DNA of 64,000 bases from Octopus sinensis. Lineage: Eukaryota. The stretch spans positions 121,706,001 to 121,770,000 of the forward strand of contig NC_042999.1 of assembly GCF_006345805.1 (NCBI RefSeq), written 5' to 3'. Below the pieces are notes generated by a model, which was given only the letters and a program-made list of their open reading frames with translations, was not told where the DNA came from and did no database searches. Positions 1-58,581 of this stretch are shown piece by piece (the stretch's first letter is position 1; every line of letters begins with the position of its first letter). The position numbers and the translations under genes were made by a program.

Positions 1-326
1 AGAAAGTATCCATCAGAAGAATTAATGTTTAGACAATAAAAGCAAGACAATTATGGTAATTCTGCACATTACTTGATGTAAAAAAGTAAAACACTTATGA
101 TATTTAAATTCTTGGGTAACTTTTGCTTTTAAGATTTGAATTGAGAGACAAATATTGTTGATGTAATATTTTGCTTTAAATCCTGTGGAGGTTAACTTGG
201 CTTTTCATTTTTCTCATGTAATTGTAGTTCTAAACTCATGTACTACCTGATACTCTTCAGTTGAATAAATCTTTTTCCTCTGAATTTGTGTAATTTTCCC
301 TATGTTGGACATCAGTATACTCAAGA

Positions 327-399
327 TTTTCTTTTTTCTTTTTTAGGTAAGTTTTTCAACATTATGTTACAGACGGATTAAAACAAAGTTTATGTAAGT
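327..399 (+). other. Candidate recursive splice site (polypyrimidine-AG|GTAAGT) with 47-nt cryptic exon and second GTAAGT donor
   Basis: 18-nt pure pyrimidine tract 327-344, AG 345-346, GTAAGT 347-352, second GTAAGT at 394-399. Sequence pattern only; no transcript evidence. Confidence 0.4.
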
Positions 400-1175: not shown

Positions 1176-4100
1176 ATTCATCTAGTTTATTACACCTTTC
1201 CCCAAATTTAAAGTATTGTGTCTATATTAGAAATGATTTTTGTGGGAACAGTTATTGGGGAGGAATTGGTAAAGTATTGGACAAAATTCCACACACTATT
1301 TAATACATACCATTATATTATGTATATAAACTCATCTTGGGTCAACTTTGAATTTCATTCTTTCAGGACTAATAAAATAAGTATCAATCAAGTATTGTAG
1401 TTGGTTTAATCAACTGCATCAACTCTCAGTGCTAAGGTTTGAAATCAATTCTATTAATGTGAGGTGAATTGGCAGACTTGTTAAAACATCAGACAAGATA
1501 ACTTGCATTTTGTAATATCCCTTTAAATTCTGTGTTCTAATCTTACAAAGTCTACTTCTCCTTTCATTTTTTCAGGGTTAATACACCCAGTACCAATCAA
1601 GTACTGGGATCTTTTCCCAAAATTCTCTAGCTTTTGGCCTATGTAACAAATTATTTGTGGTGGCTGGAGGCAATGAGTAGCAGAATCAGTAGAACACTGC
1701 ACTGAGCAACATTTTCCCATTTCATTCTGTGATCAAATCCTGCAAAATTCAGTTTTAGCTTACATCGTAATCCCCTTGTTAAAAATAAGTATGACTAATG
1801 TATTAGGTCTATAAATAATCATAATTCATATTTCAAGTGTTGTGGTCATGTACCAAAGTAAGAAATTACTACTAAGAGAAAAATGCAATGTAGGTAAGAA
1901 GAATGCATATAAAAGTTATTGTGATGCAACCTTTCAGGAATGTGCAGGTACATATAAGCAAATCAAACACAGTCTGTTAAATATTACCATGAGGTGCCTT
2001 TAGTAAAGTTCACTCCATTACTAACCTTTGGAAAAATGCTTGATTCCCCATCCTGTTCATGTTTTTTCTGCAGATTTTGTCTGATTTTGGAACTCACCTT
2101 TATATATATTTAATGACATTTTTATTGAAGATGTTATAGAATGTAATCCAAGATTAGTTTGTCTTTTATCTGATATATATATTGTTATTAGTGGTACCAT
2201 TGCCACTGCTATCATCATTGTCATAGCTTTAATACCTGTTTCCCATACCATTAAATTACAAAGTTTTCTATGAAATTTAGGTCATATCAAAAAAGTTTTA
2301 TTCTTGAATTCCCTTACTTGTATTAGAAACAGCTACATTTGTTACACAAACAGTAATTTTTTCTGACAGCTGCAGAAGGTTTGCCATAGTATCATTAAAC
2401 ATTTTACAGGTTTTCTATAGACTATATACAATATTTTAACCATCACTACTTTCATGAATAAATTTACTAGATATATAAGATAACTGTAAATGTCTATTAT
2501 GTTTATATAATCTCAATGTGAGTCCAAATGGACAACACTGTTTCAGCTGTTCTGAGAGCTTTATCAGCAACAGGTTGTCTTACATTTTGCAGCCTCCTCA
2601 AAACTATGTTTATAGCTACTGTTGAAACGTTTATAATTAAATCACATAAAAACTCTTTTACAAATTCAGTAATGTTTAAAATCTTTGGGTATGCTCCATA
2701 GTAAACATTTGCATGGAAAGTAAACACTGTTAGCATATACATAATTTATGTAAATAGAATCAACAGCCAAATATACAAATATACAATGCATAAAATGTGC
2801 CAAATGTACGATTCTGTCGATCTAATTTTGTTATAAGTTTAACACCAGCAACTCTAAAAATTTTGCAGTAGCAGAAAAATGTGGAGGGGCAATTAATGAT
2901 AAAACTTAAAAAATAATTTATACAGCATCATCCAGTCAGTCCCTCTTTTGTTGTCCATGATGAGATTGTAGAATCAAGACAGACATTTATGCTGGTCGTA
3001 CATATCTAGTAAATTTATTTAATTTGTGTATGCAAAAGTCTTTGGGTATATACCAAAGTAACATTTAGTATGAAAAATAAATAATGCTGATGTGTCAGTA
3101 ATTTATATAACAAAAAATTATATACTTAGCCAATTAAGAATTTATAGAACACATATTCTTAATACAAGTGTATTTCATCCATATTTATTATGTAGAATTT
3201 TTGCTTCAACACTGATGGACAGTTTCATCAGATAACAAAAAAAAATAATAAAGAGATGAACAACCACACAAATAGTCAAATACCAGAGGTTATATAGATG
3301 TACAACAAATATAGTGGTATATACAAAATTGTTGAGGGAAAGATAAATAATTGACATCAGCACTTTTTCATTATAGTTTATTTATTATATTTTAACACTT
3401 TAATGTGGTTTGGAAGGAGCTGATCACAAATTTAATATTTATGCCATATTTATGTCATTTGGTTTATAATTTTGCATGAAGTAGGTGTTGAAATGCTTAA
3501 CCAGTTAATAAATTTCTGATGTAGAAATGAAATCATTGCACATACAATGCATATAATTTTTTTTCACTTGTTGAGGGAAGTAGTATGTACAGCAGCAACT
3601 GTAACAGTAGCTGTAATAGCAATAATAATGGAAGTAACAGTGTTTGTTTATCATATTTAAAGAAGTTTTCTTTCAAACGATTATCTGTTTCTTGATTCAC
3701 ATTAATTATGGAATTTTGACGATTGCATTGTAGTCTTGGATTTTAAATAGTAACACAAACAAATTTAAAATGGTTCTGAATTTCTTCTACAGACTCTTCT
3801 GTCAATATATATTTTATAAGCATTAAGGACAGCTGGAAGTTCAGTTTGAGCTTTGCAAGGTTCAAGGGTAGAATTTTAGAACAGGAAAGATAAATAAAAG
3901 TTCTTAAGGAGAATGTTGTGTATATAACCTCTGGGAGTTAGATACTCAATATTTCAGCACAGGGAAGAGGAAAGGCAAGCGAAAAAGAAATTTACAGGGA
4001 GTTGAATAATGTCCACTGGAGGGCATAGATAGCAGTAGCAGTAGGGGAGATTTCGTGACCTATTCTCACAAGTAGTTTATCTAAATCTAGATGTTTTAGT

Positions 4101-10572: not shown

Positions 10573-11793
10573 TCAGGTTAAGTGAAACGTAAGCAATGTT
10601 TTGAACCCTGAAGAATATGTGTTCCAGATTCTTGTAGTGTTTTGAATTTTTGAAAACATTTTTTGCAATTGTCTGATAACACAGACATAGGCTTGCTCAA
10701 ATGCATCAATAAATTAACTTTGTTGTTTTTTTTCACCTTTGTTACAATCATTTGAAGTGGAACTGTCAAGCGCGATATTTGAGAAATTTTGCTATTCAAC
10801 TTCAAAAAAGGATGTAAAGCAACTGAAACTGCTCATAATATCAACAAAACATTTGGTGAGGAAATGACTAGTGAGTGGTCAGCTCAAAAGTGGTTTAAGC
10901 ATATTGGACGCCCATCTCTCATCGATGACAGTCAATTAAAAACAGTCATTGAGAAAGCTCTATGTAAAACCACTTGAGAATGGGCAAATGAACTTCAAAT
11001 TAGCCACAAAACTGCCTGCAATCATTAGCATGTGACCGGAAGATAAAAAAAGCTTGACAAATAGGTACCACACGATTTGAATGAAGATCAGAAAATGCAC
11101 AGATATGAAATTTGCACCTCACTTCTTCACCATAACCAGACTGATCCATTTCTTGACCGTATTGTAACTTGCAATGAAAATTAGATCCTGTACAGTAACA
11201 AAAACGTTCTTCACAGAGGTTGGACTAAAATGAAGCCTCGAAAACTTTCCCTGAATCTAAGCTCTTCAAAAAGAAAGTTATGGTAACTGTTTGGTTATGT
11301 ACTGCTGGACTCAGCCACTATAACTTCTTAAAACCCATACAAACCATTATTGCAGAAAAATATTGCCATGAAATTACTAAAATGAAAGAAAAACTGCTAC
11401 TCCTCTGTCCCAGACTGGTCAACAGAAAAGGGCCAGTCATTCTTCACTAATGATGCTCCAGAAGTTGAGGGATCTTGGGTACGAAGTTCTTCCCCACTTT
11501 GCTTATTCCCCAGACCTTTCTCCTACCGACTACTACTTTTTCAGGTACCTTGATGGTTTCCTGTGAGAGAAGGAGTTAAAAAATCAAACCGATGCTGAAA
11601 GTGCATTTAAAGAGTTCATCAGCTCCAGACCTCCAGATTTTTATGTTACCAGAATAAACAAACTCGTAACTCATTGATAAAAATATGTTGATTGTAATGG
11701 TACTTACTTTGATGAATAGAATTTCCACATTGTTGAAATATATTGTGATGAATTTCATGTCTCACGATGTTGCTTACTTTTTACTCATCCTGA
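10573..11793 (+). mobile_element. Mariner DNA transposon, near full length, inactive
   Basis: 24-bp TIRs tcaggttaagtgaaacgtaagcaa / revcomp tcaggatgagtaaaaagtaagcaa (20/24), TA TSD at 10571-72 and 11794-95, 1221 bp. Confidence 0.9.
10757..11719 (+). pseudogene. Mariner transposase pseudogene (multiple stops and frameshifts)
   Basis: LLFNFKKGCKATETAHNINKTFGE (HTH), GRPSLIDD, *VPHDLNEDQK (WVPHEL-like), FLDRIVTCNE, KKVMVTVW, LVNRKGPVILH, AYSPDLSPTDYYFF (YSPDL motif). Confidence 0.9.
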
Positions 11794-13696: not shown

Positions 13697-13878
13697 GTTG
13701 CATCTGCTGTTTCTGCTAGTCAGCACAGCTGTGCATTATGTAATGGAATGTGCAAAACTTTTGCCAGGCTCAAGAGGCATACAAGGGCCTCACATTGTAT
13801 CAATAATGACTCATTTCAGTGATTCTTTCTAACAATGGCTTTACTCATATATGAGAAAGCAGTTAAGATATATATATA

Positions 13879-13914
<36 letters not shown>

Positions 13915-13917
<3 letters not shown>

Positions 13918-14356
13918 ATAATATACATCTGGAAGATCCTGGAAGGACTTGTCCCAAACTTTGGCATTGAGAGTTACACAAATGCCAGAACTGGGCGCAA
14001 CTGCGTGGTGCCTAGGACTCCAAATTTGCCATCAAGATGTAGGACAAGATACTGTGATAGCCTGGGCTTCCGAGGCCCACAGCTCTTCAATATCCTCCTG
14101 AAGAACCTAAGAGACCTGCATGGGGTGGATGCAGATGTCTTTAAAATGAAACTGGATCTCTTCTTGTCAGGTATCCCAGATGAACCAACTTCACGGCAGG
14201 AGGTGCAGATGAGGGCAGCTGCATCAAACTCTCTCATGCACCAAATGGCAGTTGCTAAAAAGCATTCATGAAGTAAAACCATGTAGCAACACCAAATGGC
14301 GGTGCCCCAGCATGGCCACAGCTCGTGAGCTGAAACTAGAATCAATCAATCAATCA

Positions 14357-14360
<4 letters not shown>
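13915..14360 (+). mobile_element. 5'-truncated CR1/L2-type LINE, copy 1 (ORF2 C-terminus, 3' UTR, (AATC)n tail)
   Basis: Near-identical to the 3' end of the 39704-43506 element; open frame ...RYCDSLGFRGPQLFN...KKHS*; flanked by (TA)n. Confidence 0.95.
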
Positions 14361-14394
<34 letters not shown>

Positions 14395-14411
14395 TATATA
14401 TATATATATAT

Positions 14412-14853
14412 GCCATAATATACATCTGGAAGATCCTGGAAGGACTTGTCCCAAACTTTGGCATTGAGAGTTACACAAATGCCAGAACTGGGCGCAACTG
14501 CGTGGTGCCTAGGACTCCAAATTTGCCATCAAGATGTAGGACAAGATACTGTGATAGCCTGGGCTTCCGAGGCCCACAGCTCTTCAATATCCTCCTGAAG
14601 AACCTAAGAGACCTGCATGGGGTGGATGCAGATGTCTTTAAAATGAAACTGGATCTCTTCTTGTCAGGTATCCCAGATGAACCAACTTCACGGCAGGAGG
14701 TGCAGATGAGGGCAGCTGCATCAAACTCTCTCATGCACCAAATGGCAGTTGCTAAAAAGCATTCATGAAGTAAAACCATGTAGCAACACCAAATGGCGGT
14801 GCCCCAGCATGGCCACAGCTCGTGAGCTGAAACTAGAATCAATCAATCAATCA

Positions 14854-14857
<4 letters not shown>
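14412..14857 (+). mobile_element. 5'-truncated CR1/L2-type LINE, copy 2 (tandem duplicate, period 497 bp)
   Basis: Same truncation point, same translated ORFs and same tail length as copy 1. Confidence 0.95.
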
Positions 14858-14921
<64 letters not shown>

Positions 14922-15338
14922 CCAAACTGCGCAACATGCCCAAACCTTCTAGAAGGATCAGAATTTCTTTTCAAAGAGGAACAAAAATTCAAGATCAGAT
15001 CTAATTTTACTTGTGCTTCTGAAAACATAATTTATGTCATAAGGTGCTCGGGCTGCCACTAAAACTACGTGGGGTCTTTGGGATTATCACTCAGACATAG
15101 ATTCACTCTGCATCGACAACAGATTGCATTCCCAGAATACAGAATGATACCCTTTAGTGAGCATATTGAGAAATGCGCAAAGCAACTACTACCACAATTT
15201 TTAATCGTTCCATTCTATCAATGTGCCATCGGAACACCAACACAAATTAGATTAAACAAGGAAACATTCTTCATTGAAAAATATAAGCCTGAACTTAACC
15301 ATCCTAACATTCTTATACAGAGAAACTCATCTCATTAG
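14922..15338 (+). pseudogene. Penelope-like GIY-YIG endonuclease C-terminal domain
   Basis: PNCATCP...SNFTCASENIIYVIRCSGCH*NYVGSLGLSLRHRFTLHRQQI...RLNKETFFIEKYKPELN; one in-frame TAA at 15060-15062. Confidence 0.9.
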
Positions 15339-22152: not shown

Positions 22153-22339
22153 CTTCGGTATAGGTACCAGAAATACTGGATACATTTCAAGAAAGTGTTT
22201 TTTTATATATATATGGGGGATTAGGATTAGGGTTAGGGTTAGGGTGAGGGTAAGGGTTTGGGGTGGGAGAAAAGGGTTTCTGTTATATTCAGAAATGTAA
22301 ACAAAACCACTTCCGGTACTTACAGTACCTATACCAAAG
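22153..22339. mobile_element. Small inverted-repeat element enclosing a degenerate (TTAGGG)n tract
   Basis: cttcggtataggtac (22153-22167) and gtacctataccaaag (22325-22339) match 14/15; ttaggattagggttagggttagggtgagggtaaggg at 22221-22256. Confidence 0.6.
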
Positions 22340-31018: not shown

Positions 31019-32963
31019 CATCATCATCATCATCATCGTAAAACATCCATGCTGGCATGGGTTGGACGGTTTGACCAAGGTCTGGAGAGCCAGCAGCTGC
31101 ATCAGGCTCCAATCTCATCTGGCAATGTTTCTACAACTGGATGCCCTTTCTAATGCCAACCACTCCAAGAGTGTAATGGGTGCTTTTTATGTGCCACCGG
31201 CACAAAAGCCAGTCAGGCAGGCCTGGCATCAATCATATTTAGATAGTGCTTTTTATGTGCCACCAGTCAGTGGGTACTGGCATCAGCCATGTTCAGATGG
31301 TACTTTTTATGTGCCACTGGCACAGGGGCCAGTCAGATGGGCCTGGCATTGATCATATTTAGATAGTGCTTTTAATGTGCCACTGGCAATGGGGCCCCGT
31401 CAGAGGGTACTGGCATCGGCCACATTTGGTTGGTGCATTTTATGTGCCACCAGCACAGGAGCCAAGTAGGAGGATCTGACACCAACCGCATTCAGATGTT
31501 GCTTTTTACATGCCACTGGTATGGGAACCAGTCTTGGGGCACTGGCCACAGCTACAATATTGGTTTCACTTGACTCAACAGGTCTTCTCAAGCATATCAT
31601 ATTACATAATGCATCAAGGGTTCTCTTAACTGGGCCGGTCATGCATGGCTGCAATCTCACTTTAGTTACTGGGTCTTCTCAATCATACCATACCTCCAAA
31701 GGTCTTGGTCTCCTGTCATTACCTCTGTGAGGCCCATTGTTCAAAGGTCATGCTTCACCACCTCATCCCATATCTTCTTGGGTCTACCTCTTACATAGGT
31801 TCCTTCCACAGTTAGGGAGTGACACTTCCTCATGCAGCTGTCCTCATCCAAATGTAACACATGACCATACCAGCACAGTCATTTATTTTGCCCACCACAT
31901 CTGATACTTCATATGCCCAACTTTTCTCTCAGGGCACTTACACTCTGTCGTGTATGTACACTGACATTACACATCCAGCAAATCATACTAGCTTCATTTC
32001 TTTCAAGCCTACACATGTCCTCCACAGTCATGGCTCATGTTTCACTGCTGTGTAGCATGGCAATTTGCACACATGCATCATACAGTCTACCTTTCCTCCT
32101 GAGTGAGAGTCCCTTAGTTACCAGCAGAGGTAGGAGTGAACTTTGCCCAGGCTATTCTTATTTGAACCTCTACACTCTCAGAGCAACCATCCTTACTACA
32201 GACTTGGTCGCCTAGGTAGCGGAAGCTATTAACACCTAGTTTTTCCCCCTGGCATGTGATGGAATCTGTTGTCTGTACATCTTCAATGTTTATTGCTCCT
32301 GTGCATCGGTCACACACAAAACTATGTTCCCGGTTAACTTTTCTTTGATATTGCTGCACCTGTTATGCATCCGTAGCTTACACTAGGTACATCTTATGGA
32401 GTTTATACTTATGCATTTTCTACAGATTGAGTAGAGTCATCTACTTGAAGGGGATTGTGGTTTGACAGCCTTCCTACTTACTAAGACTTTGGTTTTTGCT
32501 AGCTTGATCCTAGGGCCCTTCTATTCTAAACCTTGCTTCCACACTCTAAACTTCATCTCTAGTTCTGGCAGTAACTCGGCTATTAGGGCAAGGTCATCAG
32601 CATAGAGGAGCTCCCAGGGGCAGCCTGTCTTGAATTCTTCTGTTATTGCCTGGAGGACTATAATGAATAAGAGAGGGCTGAGGACTGATCCTTGGTGAAC
32701 CCCTTCTTCTACTTGGAATTCTTCACTATATTCATTGCCAACCCTCACCTTACTGACAGTATCCTTGTACATGGCTTGTACAGCTCTTACCAACCATTCT
32801 TCTATCCCCAGTTTCCACATTGTCCATCAAATAAGAGATCGGAGGACCTTGTCAAAGCCTTTCTCCAAGTCAACAAAAGCCAAGTACAGAGGTTTATCTT
32901 TGGCTAGGTATATCTCTTTAAGTTGCCTTACCAGAAATATAGCATTGGTGGTGCTTCTGCCTT
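31019..32963 (-). mobile_element. 5'-truncated RTE LINE (RT core to (GAT)n tail), decayed
   Basis: GRSTTNAIFLVRQL, LYLAFVDLEKGFDKV, GVHQGSVLSPLLF, WELLYADDLALIAE, FVCDRCTG, FRYLGD; 3' UTR tandem units; tail at 31019-31036. Confidence 0.92.
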
Positions 32964-37835: not shown

Positions 37836-38194
37836 CATCCGTTCGTAGCTGTTGCCAGCCTTGCCTGGCCCCCATGCCGGTGGCACGTAAAAAGCACCAT
37901 CCATTCATGGCCATTGCCATACTCGCCTGGCCCCTGTGCTGGTGGCACATAAAAAGCACCATCCGACTGAGGCCATTTGCCAGACTCGTCTGGCACCTGT
38001 GCCGGTGGTACGTAAAAGGCACCCGCTACACTCATGGAGTGGTTGGCGTTAGGAAGGGCATCCAGCCGTAGAAACATTGCCAGATCAAACTGGGCCTGGT
38101 GCAGCCTTCTGGCTTCCCAGACCCCAGTTGAACTGTCCAACCCATGCTAGCATGGAAAGCGGACGCTGAACGATGATGATGATGATGATGATGA
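37836..38194 (+). mobile_element. RTE-type 3' UTR fragment with (GAT)n tail
   Basis: gtggcacgtaaaaagcaccatcc units, ggcgttaggaagggcatccagc, ccatgctagcatggaaagcggacg, (gat)n. Confidence 0.9.
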
Positions 38195-38842: not shown

Positions 38843-39339
38843 GGTGCCCCAGCATGACTGCAGTCTAATGATGAAAGCAAATAAATATAAGAATATTCAC
38901 ATAAGGAACATATACATATGTTTACCTTACACTAGCTTCTGTGCTATTTAAAGTTTTCTACAACCACTAGCTCCTTCAGCCAATGAAGAATATAACATGC
39001 TCCTATGAAGGTTATTGGCAACCAGACATAAGGAGATGAATATTCAATCTCTCTTGTCTGGCTGCTGCTTATCGTAAACTTTTTGACCAGAACAGCTATC
39101 AAGAATAAAGTGAGAAAATTTATATTCACTTCTTTTGTTGGGTTAGAGAAAAATGGCTTGTGACTTAAAATATTTAGAACTGATTTATGTTGTAATTATA
39201 CAAACACGAATCTCATAAGGCACTTCTTAATTATTTTTGAAGAAGAAATGTATTCAGTTAAAGTGCTAATTAGATATTAGTTGGGGCTATAACCAACCCT
39301 CTCTCTCCCTCTCTCTCTCTATATATATATACATACATA

Positions 39340-39353
39340 TATAAGTATACATA

Positions 39354-39400
<47 letters not shown>

Positions 39401-39401
39401 G

Positions 39402-39452
<51 letters not shown>

Positions 39453-39466
39453 GTATATGTATATGT

Positions 39467-39547
<81 letters not shown>

Positions 39548-39588
39548 TATATATATAATATGTATATATATATATATATGTATATATA

Positions 39589-39625
<37 letters not shown>

Positions 39626-39703
39626 GTATACATATATATATGTATACATATGTTTACATATATATATATATATGTATATATATTATATATATATATATAT
39701 ATA
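39340..39703. repeat. Long interrupted (TA)n array
   Basis: Direct observation; source of the YI-repeat ORFs. Confidence 0.95.
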
Positions 39704-39792
39704 TGATTGATTGATTGATTGATTCTAGTTTCAGCTCACGAGCTGTGGCCATGCTGGGGCACCGCCATTTGGTGTTGCTACATGGTTTTACT

Positions 39793-42742
39793 TCACGAAT
39801 GCTTTTTAGCAACTGCCATTTGGTGCATGAGAGAGTTCGATGCAGCTGCCCTTATCTGCACCTCCTGCCGTGAAGCTGGTTCATCTGGGATACCTGACAA
39901 GAAGAGATCCAGTTTCATTTTAAAGACATCTGCATCCACCCCATGCAGGTCTCTTAGGTTCTTCGGGAGGATATTGAAGAGCTGTGGGCCTCAGAAGCTC
40001 AGGCTATCACAGTATCTTGTCCTACATCTTGATGGCAAATTTGGAGTCCTTGGCACCACGCAGTGGCGCCCAGTTCTGGCATTTGTGTAACTCTCGATGC
40101 CAAAGTTTGGGACAAGTCCTACCAGGATCTTCCAGATGTATATTATGGCATATCTTTCTCGCCTACGCTCCAAGGAATAGAGTTTTAATCTCTTGAGTCT
40201 TTCCCAGTAGCTTATATTCTGCACAGAGGCTATCTTCTTCGTGTAGCTACGTTGGATCGCCTCAAGTTCTGTGATCAACTTGACACTGGATGGTGACCAT
40301 AGCTGAGAGCAATAGTCAAAGTGGCTTAGGACAAGTGTCCTCCAGAGGACCATCATGGTTTCTTGTTCTCTTGTTCTAAAGGTTCTAAGAATCCATCCGG
40401 CCAGTCGTCTACATTTCATTGCCAATTTAGCAACATGTACACGAAAGGTTGCGTCATCGCTCATGTAAATACCCAGGTCACGCACTGATTGTGCCTCTGG
40501 GATTGCAATTCCTCCGGGTCCAGTGTATTCATTGGGTATTGCATTTAGTTTTGCATGCTGATAGCATAAAGCTTGAAACTTTTCAGCATTGAACTGCATG
40601 CTATTCTTTTCAGCCCACTTGTATATTTTGTCCAGCTCACATTGCAGGCGTTTAGTGTCCTCAGGGTTCTGTATTGCCTGTGAAACTTTTGTATCATCTG
40701 CATAACTTGTGATCGTGGCTTTCTACGTGGCTGAGGGCATGTCTGAGAGGGCCATTATGAACAGTAGTGGTCCCAAAACAGTGCCCTGCGGAACACCGCT
40801 CACTATTTGCGTGTTAATGGAAGTGGCCCCATTGGCTACTACCACCTGACTTCTATCTTTCGGAAAGTCATGAAGCCATTCTCCCAGTTTTCCAACTATG
40901 CTAAGATCACGCAGTTTGTGACATATCATTCCATAATCGACTTTATCAAAGGCCTTTGCAAAGTCGAGATATATCACTTCCAAATTTGAGTGGTTGAGCA
41001 GTCGTTTCAGCACCCAGTCATAGTGTTGTAGGAGCTGAGTTAAGCAGCTTCTTCCTGGTCGGAAACCATGTTGGGTGTCAGGCAGCAAGTCATTTTCTTC
41101 AAGGAAGGTGATCAGTTTCCTTCTGACTATTCGTTCCATGACCTTGCTGATGTGTGAGGTCAGAGAGATAGGTCTGTAGTTCTTGGCCTCCACTCTGCTA
41201 CCTCCTTTATGAATAGGGCATATTTTACCTTCCTTCAGTTTTCTTGGAAGTTTGCCAGTTGCAAGGAAGCTCTGAAAGAGGGACTGCAGTGGTCTTGCTA
41301 GGACTCTCTTGCATACTTTTAGGAGGATTGCCGGGAATCCATCGGGTCCAGTAGCTGTGTCTGTTTTCATTTCGTCTATAGCCTTTATTACATCGTCTTC
41401 CTTTATATCGATGTAATCTATCGTCGCTGCCTCTGATTTTATATCTGCAGTGGTAAAGAAGTCAGTTGGATTGGTGATTTGGAAATGCCCAAGGGGTGGA
41501 GTGAAAACACTCTTGAATTGCTCATTCAGTATTTCACTTACCCTCATTGGTTTTCCTGTGAGTGTGCCATCCTTTTCAAGGAGTGGCCCTATCCTACAGT
41601 GCACCATAGCTGTTTCTTTGGCATACCTGTAGAAAGCTCTGGGGTTAGATTTTATGTTGTCTATAGCCCAGGCTTCTTTGTCTGCTCTTTCCTTTTCATG
41701 GGAGAGTTGCAGACATTTTTCAATTTCCAACAGTTTTATTTTCAGGCGGGACTTTTCACTGCTTTCAATTTGTTTGTTTAGGCGATTTGAAATTTTTGTA
41801 TGCCGTCTCATTAAAATTTTCCTCTCTCTGGAGATTTTGTTCTTGTGTACAGTGGCCTTTCTCTCTGGGACACATTTGTAGCATATGGCTTGCATTACAG
41901 ACATGAATTGTTGAAGTTTCACGTTGATGTCTGGTGAGGAGAGACATTCAGGCCAGTTTTGTTTGAGGATCTCTTTCTCAATTTGTTTTCAGTTTGCCTT
42001 ATGGAAGTTCAAGCTGGAAAGATTCTGAGGGTTTCTTGTAGGCTGCATGTCCATGCTTTCCTTTGGCCCGTACATGGTCAGCTCTACCATGTTGTGATGC
42101 GAGAGTAGTGTCGGTGTCACTTTCACATTCCATATTATTTGTGAAGCAGAGATCCAGTGTGTTACCTGCCCTGGTTGGTTGGAGTATTACTTGCTCCATG
42201 TACAGGGTGTTGATGAGGTTCAGGAGGGACCTCGCCTGTCCGAGTTCACATCTTGTCATTCCTGGGAGAGAAAAGCCCTCGGGCCATCTGACATTGGGTA
42301 GATTGAAGTCTCCCATAAGAAGTACACTTATGTGTTGTTCTAATGTGATTAGAACTTCTTCTATTTTTATAAGGCAGTCTTCAAACTTGCCTACATGGCT
42401 TGGGGGATCTGGAGGGCGATATGTAGCACACACAACTACATCAAGTTGCCTTATATGTACAATTAGTGTGTCACACACCGAGTTTGAGTATGACAAAAGG
42501 AACTGGGGTGTGAGGTCCTCACGGATGTACATGGCAACTCCTCCATGACTCCTTTCTTTTCTGTCGGTCCGTAGTACAACATACTGTGGTATGTGTAATT
42601 CCGCATCTGCTATGTCCGGTTTCAGGTGCGTTTCCGTAAGTGCTATGCATAAGGCTTGATTGTATGCAACAAAGTCTCTCAAGAACGAGATTTTTGTCCT
42701 GTTACTGAGTGTTTGCAGTCCTCTGATGTTCAGTAGGAGCAT
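39793..42742 (-). pseudogene. LINE ORF2 (APE endonuclease + reverse transcriptase), ~980 codons, disrupted
   Basis: MLLLNIRGL, IALTETHL, YRPP, MGDFNLP, TLDLCF, NYRPISLTS, QHGFR.GRSC, YLDFAKAFDKV, GVPQGTVLGP, YADDTK, VRDLG. One frameshift near 42100 and in-frame stops at 41989-91, 40723-25 and 39991-93. Confidence 0.95.
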
Positions 42743-43500
42743 CGAGATGAGGTGTATGCTGTTGCCGGCGGTGTCCACCTTGGGTCTATTTGCTGTGGTG
42801 GTCTTGTATATTGTGGATAGTCCCATCTGCGAGCTTGGGTTTGATGAAGCCAGGTTAGCTGCTGTACAATCTTTTGTGACATGCACAAAAAAGATTCTTG
42901 TTCAGCAGCTGCCCTTTCAACAACATCGTGTTGGCGGTTTGTGGCACACACCACATCTGCGTACCTCCGTTTTGGGGCAGGTGGTGCGTGGTCCATCCCT
43001 TTTCCTTTTGTTAGTTGGTTTCTGATCTGGTTTGTGTCTCTGCGGCAGGGTCCTCGATGTGCAAAACGGCAGTCTGCACCTTCCTCTTCATGCCAGCAGG
43101 TACCTCTCAGGTAGAACCTACACACCCATGTGCACTGTTTGTTTCCATCCTTTTTGGTATATGGATAGTCAGTTTTACTTCTATTCTTGGCTGTTTCGCT
43201 TTTTGGTTTTGTTTGAGTTTTTCTTTTAGTTTTTCCTCCTTTTATTTCTTTTTTGGGTTTTTCATCTCCATGGCTTTTGGTGCTGGTAGGAGCACTTGCA
43301 CTTGGGTTTACTTCCCGGGCAGGTTTCTCACTTGAACCTTCTTCCCGGGTGTCTACTAGGTGGAGGTGACTTCTTTCATCAGCACCCGTGTCTCCATCCT
43401 TGCCATCTTTACTTTGTTCGTTGTCAAAGATGGCATCAAGCGTGCCAATGTGAGATCTTATAAGTGCATAGGAGCATATAAACTCCTGCTTCTTCTGCTC
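42730..43500 (-). pseudogene. LINE ORF1 C-terminal part (open for ~255 codons) with a CCCH-type finger
   Basis: Open frame [11 protein letters not shown]... with a Lys-rich stretch and CRFYLRGTCWHEEEGADCRFAH; TGA at 42730-32 overlaps the ORF2 ATG (42740-42) by 13 nt; no start codon because of the truncation. Confidence 0.8.
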
Positions 43501-43506
43501 TATCTG

Positions 43507-43956
<450 letters not shown>

Positions 43957-44785: not shown

Positions 44786-45036
44786 ATTAGAAGAAAGTAA
44801 TATTATTAAGGACATTATTATACACAAAAATGATAAGCATTTGTTTACTAGTAGGCTGTGAACTGATGTGATGGAGATGACTCTTTCAAATGCTTGATGT
44901 TGAAACACCTGAAAGTTATATGCAGGTGAGACCTGAGATGTTTTAACACCTGGCATTTTGAGAGAGTCATCTCCATGCCTCGGTTGCAGTCTACCAGTAA
45001 ACAAGTGTATGTGTATTTTAATAATGTGTGTGTGTG

Positions 45037-45600
45037 TGTCTTCGGAACCTCCTTCACATCCGCTGGCAGGACAAAGTCCCAGACACGGAAGTTCTGAAGC
45101 AGGCAGATCTCCCTGGCACCATCACGATCATGCACAAGGCCCAGCTGAGATGGGCAGGCCACGTCTCCCGCATGTCCGACACTCGCATCCCAAAACAGCT
45201 CTTCTAGGGTGAGCTCAGCCGGGGCAAACACAAAGTCGGAGGGCAGAAGAAGCACTTCAGGGACAGTCTCAAAGTCTCTGTCAAAGACTTCTCCATCGGC
45301 ACAGAGACTTGGGAGACACTTGCTGCCGACCGCTCATCCTAGCACAGCGCAATCACCACAGGAGCAAAGACAGCCGAGGAGAGACGGATTCAGTCAGCAG
45401 AACAGAAGCGCCAGATGCGAAAAGCCAGAGCCACCTGCACCAATACACAGCCCCTACCCACTTCTGCCCCACCTGTGGGAGGGGCTTTCTTGCCCAGATT
45501 GGCCTCACCAGCCACCTCCGGTCTCATAGCAGCAATTCCACCAAATGATGTCAATGGTCATCTTCGAACCCGAAGGACGAACATTATTATTATTATTATT
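45037..45600 (+). mobile_element. RTE-BovB-type LINE 3' end with C-terminal C2H2 finger, (ATT)n tail
   Basis: [77 protein letters not shown]; two premature TAG. Confidence 0.9.
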
Positions 45601-47826: not shown

Positions 47827-48826
47827 ATCATCATCATCATCATCATTTAGCGTCCGCTTTCCATGCTAGCATGGGTTGGACGGGTCAACTGGGGTCTGTG
47901 AAGCTGGAAGGCTTCGTCAGGCCTAGTCAGATCTGGCAGTGTTTCTACGGCTGGATGCCCTTCCTAACGCCAACCACTCCACGAGTGTAGTGGGTGTTTT
48001 TTACGTGCCACCTGCACAGGTGCCAGACAGAGCTGGCCAACGGCCACAAACGGATGGTGCTTTTACGTGTCACCGGCACGGGGCCAGGCGATGCTGGCAA
48101 TGGACACGAACGGATGGTGCTTTTACGTGTCACTGACACAGTTGCCAGACAGAGCTGGCACACGGCCACGAACGGACGGTGCTTTTACGTGTCACCGACA
48201 CGGGGGCCAGCCGAGCCTGGCAATGGACACGAACGGATGGTGCTTTTACGTGTCACTGACACAGTTGCCAGACAGAGCTGGCAAACGGCCACGAACGGAC
48301 GGTGCTTTTACGTGTCACCGGCACGGGGCCAGGCGAGGCTGGCAACAAACACGAACGGATGGTGCTTTTACGTGCCACCGACACGGGGGCCAGACAGAGC
48401 TGGCAAACGGCCATGAGCGAATGGTGCTTTTACGTATCACCGACACGGGTGCCAGACGAGACTGACAGCGGACACGAACGGATGGGTCACTAACCCCTGC
48501 TTTCTGATATATGATTTGATTTTGATTGTTCTCACTGGTCTTGCCGGATCTTCTGACGCACAGCATACTTCCATAGGTCTCGGTCTCTGGTCATTTCCTT
48601 GGTGAGACCTAGTGTTCGAAGGTCGTGCTTCACGACCTCGACCCAGGTTTTCCTGGGTCTACCTCTTCCACAGGTCCCCTCAACTGCCAGGGTGTGGCAC
48701 TTTTTCACACACCTATCTTCATCCATTCTCGCCACATGACCATACCAGCGCAATCGTCTCTCTTGCACACAATATCTGATGCCTCTTAGGTCCAACTTTT
48801 CTCTCAAGGTACTTACACTCTGTCGA
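47827..48826 (-). mobile_element. Young 5'-truncated RTE LINE with an 8-unit tandem array in the 3' UTR
   Basis: ORF 48532-48807 VQERRLRWYGHVARM...GRGRPRKTW; eight ~61-bp units at 47995-48490; (GAT)n tail. Confidence 0.92.
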
Positions 48827-56689: not shown

Positions 56690-57886
56690 GTGTCGGTGGC
56701 ACATAAAAACACCATCCAAAGACCCGGCGACGTAGTCAGTCCACCTGTGCATACCTTCCCTCTTATGACACTTGTGAAGACCTGTTGAGGCAGAGGCAAG
56801 TGTGTGACACTTGTGAAGACCTGTTGAGGCAGAGGCAAGTGTGTGACACTTGTGGAGACCTGTTGAGGCAAGTGTGTGACACGCGTGACACTTGTGAAGA
56901 CCTGTTGAGGCAAGTGAAAATCAAACCAAATCAAAATAGATGAACATCAATGGAATTTGTATCTTTGTGGTTCCAGTACCGGTGGCACACAAGGACACGC
57001 GTGACACTTGTGAAGACCTGTTGAGGCAAGTGAAAATCAACCAAATCAAAATAGATGAACATCAATGGAATTTGTATCTTTGTGGTTCCAGTACCGGTGG
57101 CACACAAGAAACCATCCGATCGTGGCCGTTCGCCAGCCACATCTGGCACCTGTGTCGGTGGCACATTAAGACACCATCCGAAGACCCGGCGACGTAGACA
57201 GTCCACCTGTGCATACCTTCCTTCTTGTGACACTTGTGAAGACCTGTTGAGGCAAGTGACACTTGTGAAGACCTGTTGAGGCAAGTGAAAATCAAATCAA
57301 ATCAAAACAAATCAAAATAGATGAGCATAAATGGAATTTGTATCTTTGTGGTACCAGTGCCGGTGGCACACAAGAAAATCATCCGAACGTGGCCGTAGCC
57401 AGTACCGCATAGACTGGCCTCCGTGCTTTGGGGACGTAACAAACACCATCCGATCGTGGCCGTCCGCCAGCCTCATCTGGCACCTGTGTCGGTGGCACAT
57501 AAAAACACCATCCGAGCGTGGCCGTCTGCCAGCCTCGTCTGGCACCTGCCAGCCTCATCTGGCACCTGTGTCGGTGGCACATAAAAACACCATCCGAGCG
57601 TGGCCGTCTGCCAGCCTCGTCTGGCACCTGTGTCGGTGGCACATAAAAACACCATCCGAGCGTGGCCGTTCGCCAGCCTCGTCTGGCACCTGTGTCGGTG
57701 GCACATAAAATCACCCACTACACTCTCGGAGTGGTTGGCGTTAGGAAGGGCATCCAGCTGTAGAAACACTGCCAGATCTGACTGGCCTGGTGCAGCCTTC
57801 GGGCTCCCCAGACCCCAGTTGAACCGTCCAACCCATGCTAGCATGGAAAACGGACGCTAAATGATGATGATGATGATGATGATGAT
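56689..57886 (+). mobile_element. RTE-type 3' region with nested internal duplications, (GAT)n tail
   Basis: Seven copies of tgacacttgtg(a/g)agacctgttgaggca, three of aaatcaaaatagatga, several gtggcacataaaaacaccatcc units. Confidence 0.9.
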
Positions 57887-58447: not shown

Positions 58448-58581
58448 CACACATATATATATATATTTATATCATATATGTGTGTGTGCATTTTTGGTTG
58501 TTTTTTCTTCTTTTGTTCCAGTTTGAGGACTGTGGCCATGCTGGATATATACATATATATATACACACACATACATATAAT

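What the first reader, a model, noticed from the sequence alone, without database searches (positions are those of the whole stretch)
327..399. Candidate recursive splice site (ratchet point) with a 47-nt cryptic exon
Seen: an 18-nt uninterrupted pyrimidine tract ends in AG that runs directly into a perfect GTAAGT, and a second perfect GTAAGT follows 47 nt downstream. Established: Drosophila and vertebrate recursive sites are polyY-AG|GT junctions in very long introns, usually defined by a short cryptic exon with its own downstream donor. Inference: this is a recursive site in a giant + strand intron, consistent with tens of kb without recognisable exons downstream. I am not aware of recursive splicing being described in cephalopods.
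Basis: partly seen in the sequence, partly recalled or inferred. Interest (0 to 1): 0.7.

Follow-up and report, generated by a model that had tools for sequence, protein, structure and literature searches.

The report
Candidate recursive splice site, unproven
A short stretch of likely octopod DNA matches every sequence feature of a "recursive" splice site, the kind that removes giant introns in steps, and chance explains it poorly, but nothing available here shows that this strand is transcribed or spliced.

Summary
An 18-nt pyrimidine tract (327-344) is followed by AG (345-346), GTAAGT (347-352) and a second GTAAGT at 394-399, 47 nt downstream.

It is the only such site in the window and an extreme outlier: 14.8 against 6.8 for the next of 344 AG|GT sites. 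From the window's own frequencies I expect about 0.0006-0.005 such cores per 64 kb. The whole architecture should arise roughly once in a 2.7-Gb genome.

It meets every sequence-level criterion of fly ratchet points:
- TT at -5/-6 and YAG|GTAAGT.
- A possible branch A at -24.
- A cryptic exon of about 50 nt, out of frame and AT-rich, with its own donor.

The decisive criteria could not be tested: sense-strand position in a long intron, junction or lariat reads, and conservation. The window holds no recognisable host exon on either strand. Strand skews are uninformative. No close relative's DNA was reachable.

My estimates: about 0.42 that it is a real recursive site or RS-exon, and about 0.40 that it is an unused chance site. 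If real, it is a new member of a known kind, in a clade with no report in the searched library.

The parts
320..324 (+). Possible branch-point motif CTCAA, with branch A at 323 (-24 from the acceptor)
   Evidence: Read from the sequence. It lies within the -36 to -21 range mapped for fly ratchet-point lariats. The match to yUnAy is imperfect (final A instead of Y). This is inferred, not tested.
327..344 (+). 18-nt uninterrupted polypyrimidine tract TTTTCTTTTTTCTTTTTT, with T at -5 and -6 (342, 341) and T at -3 (344)
   Evidence: It is the only Y>=18+AG tract in the window on either strand. TT at -5/-6 is found in 99.5% of fly ratchet points.
345..346 (+). AG of the candidate 3' splice site; the putative recursive junction is 346|347
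   Evidence: The acceptor score is 10.3, tied second of 6881 AG sites. The other two sites scoring at least 10 lie in repeat-like sequence (my reading for 1575, intra-window repeat for 58521).
347..352 (+). GTAAGT: the 5' splice site that would be rebuilt after an upstream exon is joined to 347 (ratchet-point donor)
   Evidence: AGGTAAGT occurs only twice in 128 kb of strand.
347..393 (+). 47-nt candidate cryptic RS-exon
   Evidence: 25.5% GC. Its length is not a multiple of 3, and it has stops in 2 of 3 frames. Fly cryptic RS-exons are about 50 nt, generally out of frame and poorly conserved.
394..399 (+). Second GTAAGT: donor that would define the cryptic exon. Its exon-side context TAT is weaker than the usual exon-end AG.
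   Evidence: The chance of another GTAAGT within 47 nt is 0.012, and within 100 nt 0.025.

Best explanation
The segment is a ratchet point with a cryptic recursive-splicing exon on the + strand.

Proposed mechanism, all steps inferred:
1. U2AF binds the long U-rich tract, and U2 binds a branch near A323.
2. U1 bound at the downstream donor (394) helps define the 47-nt unit as an exon.
3. An upstream exon, outside the window, is spliced to 347.
4. That ligation rebuilds a donor, (exon end)|GTAAGT, at the new junction.
5. The rebuilt donor out-competes the 394 donor, whose exon side (TAT) is weaker.
6. The 47 nt are then removed together with the rest of the intron and never appear in mRNA.

Shown here: the sequence elements, their spacing and their rarity. 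Not shown: + strand transcription, location in a long intron, and use of the site.
For: - All elements are present at the stated coordinates.
- The site is unique and an extreme outlier among the 344 AG|GT sites of the window.
- Empirical chance rates are about 0.0006-0.005 cores per 64 kb, and on the order of one full architecture per 2.7-Gb genome.
- TT at -5/-6, a prominent Y-tract and a branch A within -36..-21 match fly ratchet points.
- A cryptic exon of about 50 nt with its own donor, out of frame and not coding-like, matches the fly and vertebrate RS-exon model.
- The site is not in a detectable repeat and is not a local duplication.
- No coding exon in 64 kb is compatible with a very long intron.
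Against: - No transcript evidence of any kind is available.
- The host gene and its strand are unknown, and the lack of exons fits intergenic DNA equally well.
- T-A and G-C skews are small and change sign between blocks.
- TE orientations are mixed (plus my own reading of the ORFs).
- There is no second RS-like site in the following 63.6 kb. Fly segments average 18 kb, but they range up to 63.6 kb.
- Conservation is untested.
- Recursive splicing has not been reported in cephalopods or molluscs in the library searched, so the prior number of real sites is unknown.
- The chance figures assume independence of the elements and use thresholds chosen after seeing the site.
Confidence: 0.42

Rival explanations
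1. Chance juxtaposition in AT/T-rich non-coding DNA that is not used. The site would lie in intergenic sequence, on the antisense strand of a gene, or in a unit that is not spliced there. This includes the case where the T-rich tract is the complement of an A-rich tail of an old minus-strand retroposon.
For: - The window is 29-33% G+C with many T runs and transposable elements.
- 16 Y>=10+AG sites and 33 GTAAGT occur by themselves in the window.
- Some tens to about 150 chance cores are expected per 2.7-Gb genome.
- No host exon, no strand signal and no second site were found.
- On the minus strand the tract reads CTAAAAAAGAAAAAAGAAAA, like a retroposon tail.
Against: - The complete architecture is expected only about once per genome, or about 2e-5 per window.
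- No repeat copy of the segment exists in the window or in the 21 kb of Argonauta DNA fetched.
- Even a chance-born site of this strength would probably be spliced if it lay in a sense-strand intron.
Confidence: 0.4
2. An ordinary expressed small exon (347-393), such as a 47-nt cassette, poison or UTR exon, that happens to begin with GTAAGT. It might be repressed through the UCUU-rich tract. It would then be an 'expressed RS-exon' rather than a zero-length ratchet point.
For: - It has a strong acceptor and a strong donor 47 nt apart.
- One frame is open.
- Expressed RS-exons exist in flies and are numerous in mammals.
Against: - 25.5% G+C, a length that is not a multiple of 3, and stops in two frames.
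- My rough estimate, an inference, is that real exons with all these features are several-fold rarer than even the chance architecture.
Confidence: 0.08
3. 346 is the 3' end of an ordinary upstream exon, probably non-coding. AG|GTAAGT would then be simply its donor, and the pyrimidine tract would be exonic.
For: AG|GTAAGT is the consensus exon-intron junction (established knowledge).
Against: - All three frames upstream of 346 are closed within 90 nt, as read.
- The only open stretch runs from 286, and no credible acceptor precedes it.
- The G+C content is intron-like.
- An 18-nt U-rich tract ending in YAG directly before a donor is the acceptor arrangement, not a usual exon end.
Confidence: 0.05

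Closest known systems
Drosophila intronic ratchet points with cryptic RS-exons (Hatton 1998; Burnette 2005; Duff 2015; Joseph 2018, 2021)
   Same: - Juxtaposed acceptor and donor, (Y)n-YAG|GTAAGT.
- TT at -5/-6 and a prominent pyrimidine tract.
- A branch A within -36..-21.
- A cryptic exon of about 50 nt closed by its own donor, out of frame and non-coding in composition (for the family; for this site).
   Different: - Fly sites are defined by junction reads, lariats, a saw-tooth coverage profile and deep conservation. None of these could be tested here.
- Fly recursive introns often hold several sites about 18 kb apart. Here there is no second one in 63.6 kb.
- The organism is a likely octopod, not an insect.
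Vertebrate recursive splice sites defined by RS-exons (Sibley 2015, as summarised in PMC8605326)
   Same: - Exon definition through a downstream donor.
- Competition between the rebuilt donor and the RS-exon donor.
- Inclusion of the exon would break the reading frame.
- Sites are sparse, typically one per very long intron.
   Different: Only nine fully suppressed sites in long introns were definitively noted in mammals. A motif match alone therefore has much lower predictive value there than in flies. Which regime applies to cephalopods is unknown.
Ubx microexons mI and mII (expressed RS-exons, 51 nt)
   Same: A short exon of about 50 nt that begins with a donor consensus directly after its acceptor.
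   Different: The Ubx microexons are coding, a multiple of 3 in length, and conserved even at wobble positions. The 47-nt unit here is neither coding-like nor frame-preserving.

Membership tests
Recursive splice site / ratchet point | [quoted passage not shown] | tested here: met
   T18-type tract at 327-344, then TAG|GTAAGT at 344-352. Unique in the window and top-ranked of 344 AG|GT sites by a wide margin.
Recursive splice site / ratchet point | TT at -5 and -6 of the acceptor (99.5% of fly ratchet points) | tested here: met
   Positions 341 and 342 are both T.
Recursive splice site / ratchet point | Branch point 21-36 nt upstream of the acceptor | tested here: inconclusive
   CTCAA with A323 at -24 is a possible branch site. 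It is an imperfect consensus match and has not been mapped.
Recursive splice site / ratchet point | Short cryptic RS-exon (about 50 nt) closed by a downstream donor, generally out of frame | tested here: met
   GTAAGT at 394-399 gives a 47-nt unit (47 mod 3 = 2), with stops in 2 of 3 frames and 25.5% G+C.
Recursive splice site / ratchet point | Rebuilt ratchet-point donor at least as strong as the RS-exon donor, so the cryptic exon is skipped | tested here: inconclusive
   Both intron sides are GTAAGT. The 394 donor has a weak exon side (TAT). The ratchet-point donor's exon side depends on the unknown upstream exon.
Recursive splice site / ratchet point | Lies on the sense strand inside a long intron (more than about 10 kb) | not testable with these tools
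   - No host exon is recognisable on either strand in 64 kb.
- The site is 326 nt from the window start.
- Skews are uninformative.
- The window's ORFs are not on record in the gene-position collection.
Recursive splice site / ratchet point | Junction reads from an upstream exon to the site, lariats from the site, and saw-tooth nascent-RNA coverage | not testable with these tools
Recursive splice site / ratchet point | Conservation of the SA|SD core in related species while the cryptic exon body drifts | not testable with these tools
   The DNA collections hold no cephalopod orthologue that could be reached. The best relatives of the window's LINE are only 67% and 58% identical, so no close relative is indexed.

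The most novel reading that the evidence does not exclude
Cephalopods remove at least some giant introns by recursive splicing, using the same RS-exon architecture as flies and vertebrates. That would be the first case in a lophotrochozoan. It would imply that the mechanism is either ancestral to bilaterians or arises readily wherever introns become very long.
Probability: 0.4. Interest if true: 0.55.

Novelty: new member of a known kind. Interest (0 to 1): 0.35.

Why it matters
Recursive splicing is documented in insects and vertebrates, mostly in long neuronal genes. Octopods have large genomes with long introns and elaborate RNA processing in the nervous system, yet the searched library holds no report of recursive splicing for any mollusc.

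A confirmed site would extend the mechanism to a third major bilaterian branch. It would also give a concrete locus for testing whether the RS-exon rules carry over: donor competition, an exon of about 50 nt, and U2AF-optimal TT at -5/-6.

On its own, though, this is one unverified motif match. It adds no new mechanism.

Tried and rejected
1. Finding the host gene. 56 unique, non-repeat ORFs of at least 45 aa from both strands, joined into one query, gave no hit among 5.8 billion proteins. Exact look-ups of five window ORFs found nothing on record.
2. Known RNA genes. Rfam at gathering scores and ARAGORN found nothing. The complement ACTTACCT therefore does not belong to a U1 gene.
3. Repeat origin. 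No second copy of 150-700 exists in the window or in 21 kb of Argonauta DNA. Families with few copies per Mb cannot be excluded.
4. Tandem duplication as the source of the two GTAAGT. In-register identity is 23/47, and only 16/40 outside the shared GTAAGTT, which is not significant. TRF reports nothing there.
5. Calling the transcribed strand from T-A and G-C skew after masking. The values are +1.6% and +1.1% overall, with sign changes between 8-kb blocks. TE orientation is mixed (plus my own reading of the ORFs). Rejected as uninformative.
6. A coding exon ending at 346 or running 261-346. All frames are closed.
7. Further ratchet points downstream. None were found.
8. A sense-versus-antisense enrichment test in cephalopod long introns. 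This was abandoned because only single TE-anchored loci could be fetched, which is far too little DNA. I left the third protein search unused, because no query I could supply would reliably return cephalopod long genes.
9. One literature query was badly framed and uninformative.

Full report
OBSERVATION.
- Positions 327-344 read TTTTCTTTTTTCTTTTTT, 18 pyrimidines preceded by A326.
- AG is at 345-346, GTAAGT at 347-352, and a second GTAAGT at 394-399.
- The unit between junction 346|347 and the second donor is therefore 47 nt.

IS IT MORE THAN CHANCE?
- Y10-AGGTAAGT occurs once in the window on both strands. Dinucleotide shuffles expect 0.01 exact matches and 0.03 with up to one mismatch.
- AGGTAAGT followed by GTAAGT 30-60 nt later also occurs once, with 0.02 expected.
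- Shuffles under-represent pyrimidine runs, so I also used the window's own frequencies. There are 16 Y>=10+AG sites in 128 kb of strand, and P(GTAAGT after AG) is 2-3e-4 by direct count and by Markov orders 1-4. P(another GTAAGT within 47 or 100 nt) is 0.012 or 0.025.
- This gives 0.003-0.005 cores per window.
- With a stricter acceptor score (at least 10), which only three of 6881 AG sites reach, I get about 6e-4 cores and about 2e-5 full architectures per window. The other two such sites lie in repeat-like sequence. These rates correspond to roughly 26 cores and 0.7 full architectures in a 2.7-Gb genome. The genome size is my own knowledge of sequenced octopuses.
- Ranking all 344 AG|GT pairs with a simple acceptor-plus-donor matrix puts this site at 14.8 and the runner-up at 6.8.

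These numbers assume the elements are independent, and the thresholds were chosen after the fact. They should be read as orders of magnitude. The matrix came from remembered human frequencies and serves for ranking only.

WHAT SURROUNDS IT.
- The window is 26-44% G+C and full of microsatellites and transposable elements.
- A LINE with endonuclease and reverse-transcriptase ORFs lies on the minus strand at about 40.0-43.5 kb. A mariner DDE remnant lies on the plus strand near 11.2-11.6 kb, and an RT fragment on the minus strand at 32.5-32.8 kb.
- There are several SINE-like tandem arrays.
- The first 7.7 kb hold no intra-window repeat, and 150-700 has no second copy in the window or in 21 kb of Argonauta DNA.
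- The two GTAAGT are not the trace of a 47-nt tandem duplication.
- Rfam and ARAGORN find nothing.

HOST GENE AND STRAND. This is the crux, and it stayed open.
- A joined query of 56 unique non-repeat ORFs from both strands found no relative among 5.8 billion proteins. Exact look-ups of window ORFs were not on record.
- After masking repeats, T exceeds A by 1.6% (+/-0.6) and G exceeds C by 1.1% (+/-0.9). The sign changes between 8-kb blocks.
- TE orientations are mixed (Pfam-confirmed elements; the others by my own reading of the ORFs).
- Neither signal gives a strand call.
- No other RS-like site follows within 63.6 kb.

ORGANISM. The window's LINE reverse transcriptase has as its best named relative a protein of Argonauta hians, an octopod, at 58% identity. 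An unnamed 67% match comes from an unannotated NCBI assembly. A cephalopod, probably octopod, origin is plausible. No close relative's DNA is indexed, so conservation could not be tested.

COMPARISON WITH WHAT DEFINES RECURSIVE SITES.
- In Drosophila, ratchet points are juxtaposed acceptor and donor sites with a more prominent pyrimidine tract than ordinary acceptors.
- They have TT at -5/-6 in 99.5% of cases and branch points at -36 to -21.
- They lie in introns of 11-133 kb, with segments of 2.6-63.6 kb, and their cores are conserved.
[quoted passage not shown] It is flanked by a downstream donor, generally out of frame and poorly conserved. It is skipped because the rebuilt donor wins the competition.
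- Here T341 and T342 are -6 and -5, T344 gives YAG, and A323 in CTCAA sits at -24. The 47-nt unit is 25.5% G+C, is not a multiple of three, has stops in two frames and ends in a perfect GTAAGT whose exon side (TAT) is weak.
- Every criterion that can be read from sequence is met. Every criterion that needs transcripts, annotation or relatives is untested.

MOST LIKELY MECHANISM AND ITS ODDS. If the + strand is transcribed as part of a long intron, the following would happen.
1. The unit is recognised by exon definition, with U2AF and U2 at 323-346 and U1 at 394.
2. The upstream exon is joined to 347.
3. The rebuilt (exon end)|GTAAGT donor is then used in preference to 394.
4. The 47 nt and the rest of the intron are removed, leaving no trace in mRNA.

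The posterior depends on how many real sites cephalopods have.
- With fly-like use, the odds against the roughly one-per-genome chance architecture are at least 10:1.
- With vertebrate-like sparse use, they are about even.
- With no selected use, only the roughly one-fifth of chance sites that fall in sense introns would be spliced.

Weighing these gives about 0.42 for a real recursive site. An inert chance site gets about 0.40, an ordinary small expressed exon 0.08, and an ordinary donor of an upstream exon 0.05. That last reading is disfavoured because all frames upstream are closed and no acceptor precedes the only open stretch.

NOVELTY. The library holds no paper joining recursive splicing with octopus. 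The hits for 'cephalopod' and 'mollus' hold the terms only once each; the one I opened had them only in its reference list. A predicted site in a locust shows that motif-based calls are already made in other invertebrates with giant introns. If confirmed, this would be a new member of a known kind in a new clade, not a new mechanism. As it stands it is a well-formed candidate worth one RNA-seq look-up, so I score interest at 0.35.

Noticed in passing
window 39991-43518 (minus strand): A nearly full-length LINE. It has an ORF1-like ORF (42733-43518, weak Torus-domain hit), an endonuclease ORF (41999-42886) and reverse-transcriptase ORFs (40723-41922 and 39991-40599), split by frame breaks. Its best named relative is from Argonauta hians at 58% identity. 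Long (TA)n arrays flank it at 39320-39704 and 43507-43956.
   Followed up: partly
window 13868-14891, and inverted at 39466-40153: A 497-bp unit is repeated 2.1 times in tandem at 99% identity. Each copy holds the 3' end of the same LINE family plus an (AT)n tract. The same segment occurs in opposite orientation at the 3' end of the LINE near 40 kb.
   Followed up: partly
window 31263-31519, 37852-38023, 47999-48485, 57466-57715: G+C-rich tandem arrays of 62-, 66-, 82- and 122-nt units share a core like GGTGGCACGTAAAAAGCACC. They have up to about 20 intra-window matches on both strands and look like an abundant SINE-like or satellite-bearing element.
   Followed up: no
window 11229-11563 (+), and an ORF earlier in the window (coordinates not recorded) with a helix-turn-helix-like N-terminus: Remnants of a mariner/Tc1-type transposase (Pfam Transposase_1, E 3e-12), broken into several frames.
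   Followed up: partly
window 14889-15300 (+): ORFs whose sequence resembles, by eye, the GIY-YIG endonuclease of a Penelope-like element (IYVIRCSGCH ... YVGS). Pfam gave no hit, so this rests on my reading only.
   Followed up: partly
window 22221-22262: An interstitial run of seven TTAGGG telomere-type repeats.
   Followed up: no
window 1554-1580 and 58500-58525 (+): These are the only two other acceptor-like sites as strong as the candidate's. The one at 58521 lies in an intra-window repeat block, and the one at 1575 looks SINE-derived by eye. Nine of the twelve strongest acceptor-like sites are on the + strand, which may only reflect repeat orientation and T-richness.
   Followed up: partly
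window 44961-45600 (+): This is among the most G+C-rich non-repeated stretches of the window (up to 0.61). It carries a LINE 3'-tail-like ORF ending in a CPTCGRGF...GLTSHLRSH motif. It has no Pfam hit and no other copy in the window.
   Followed up: no
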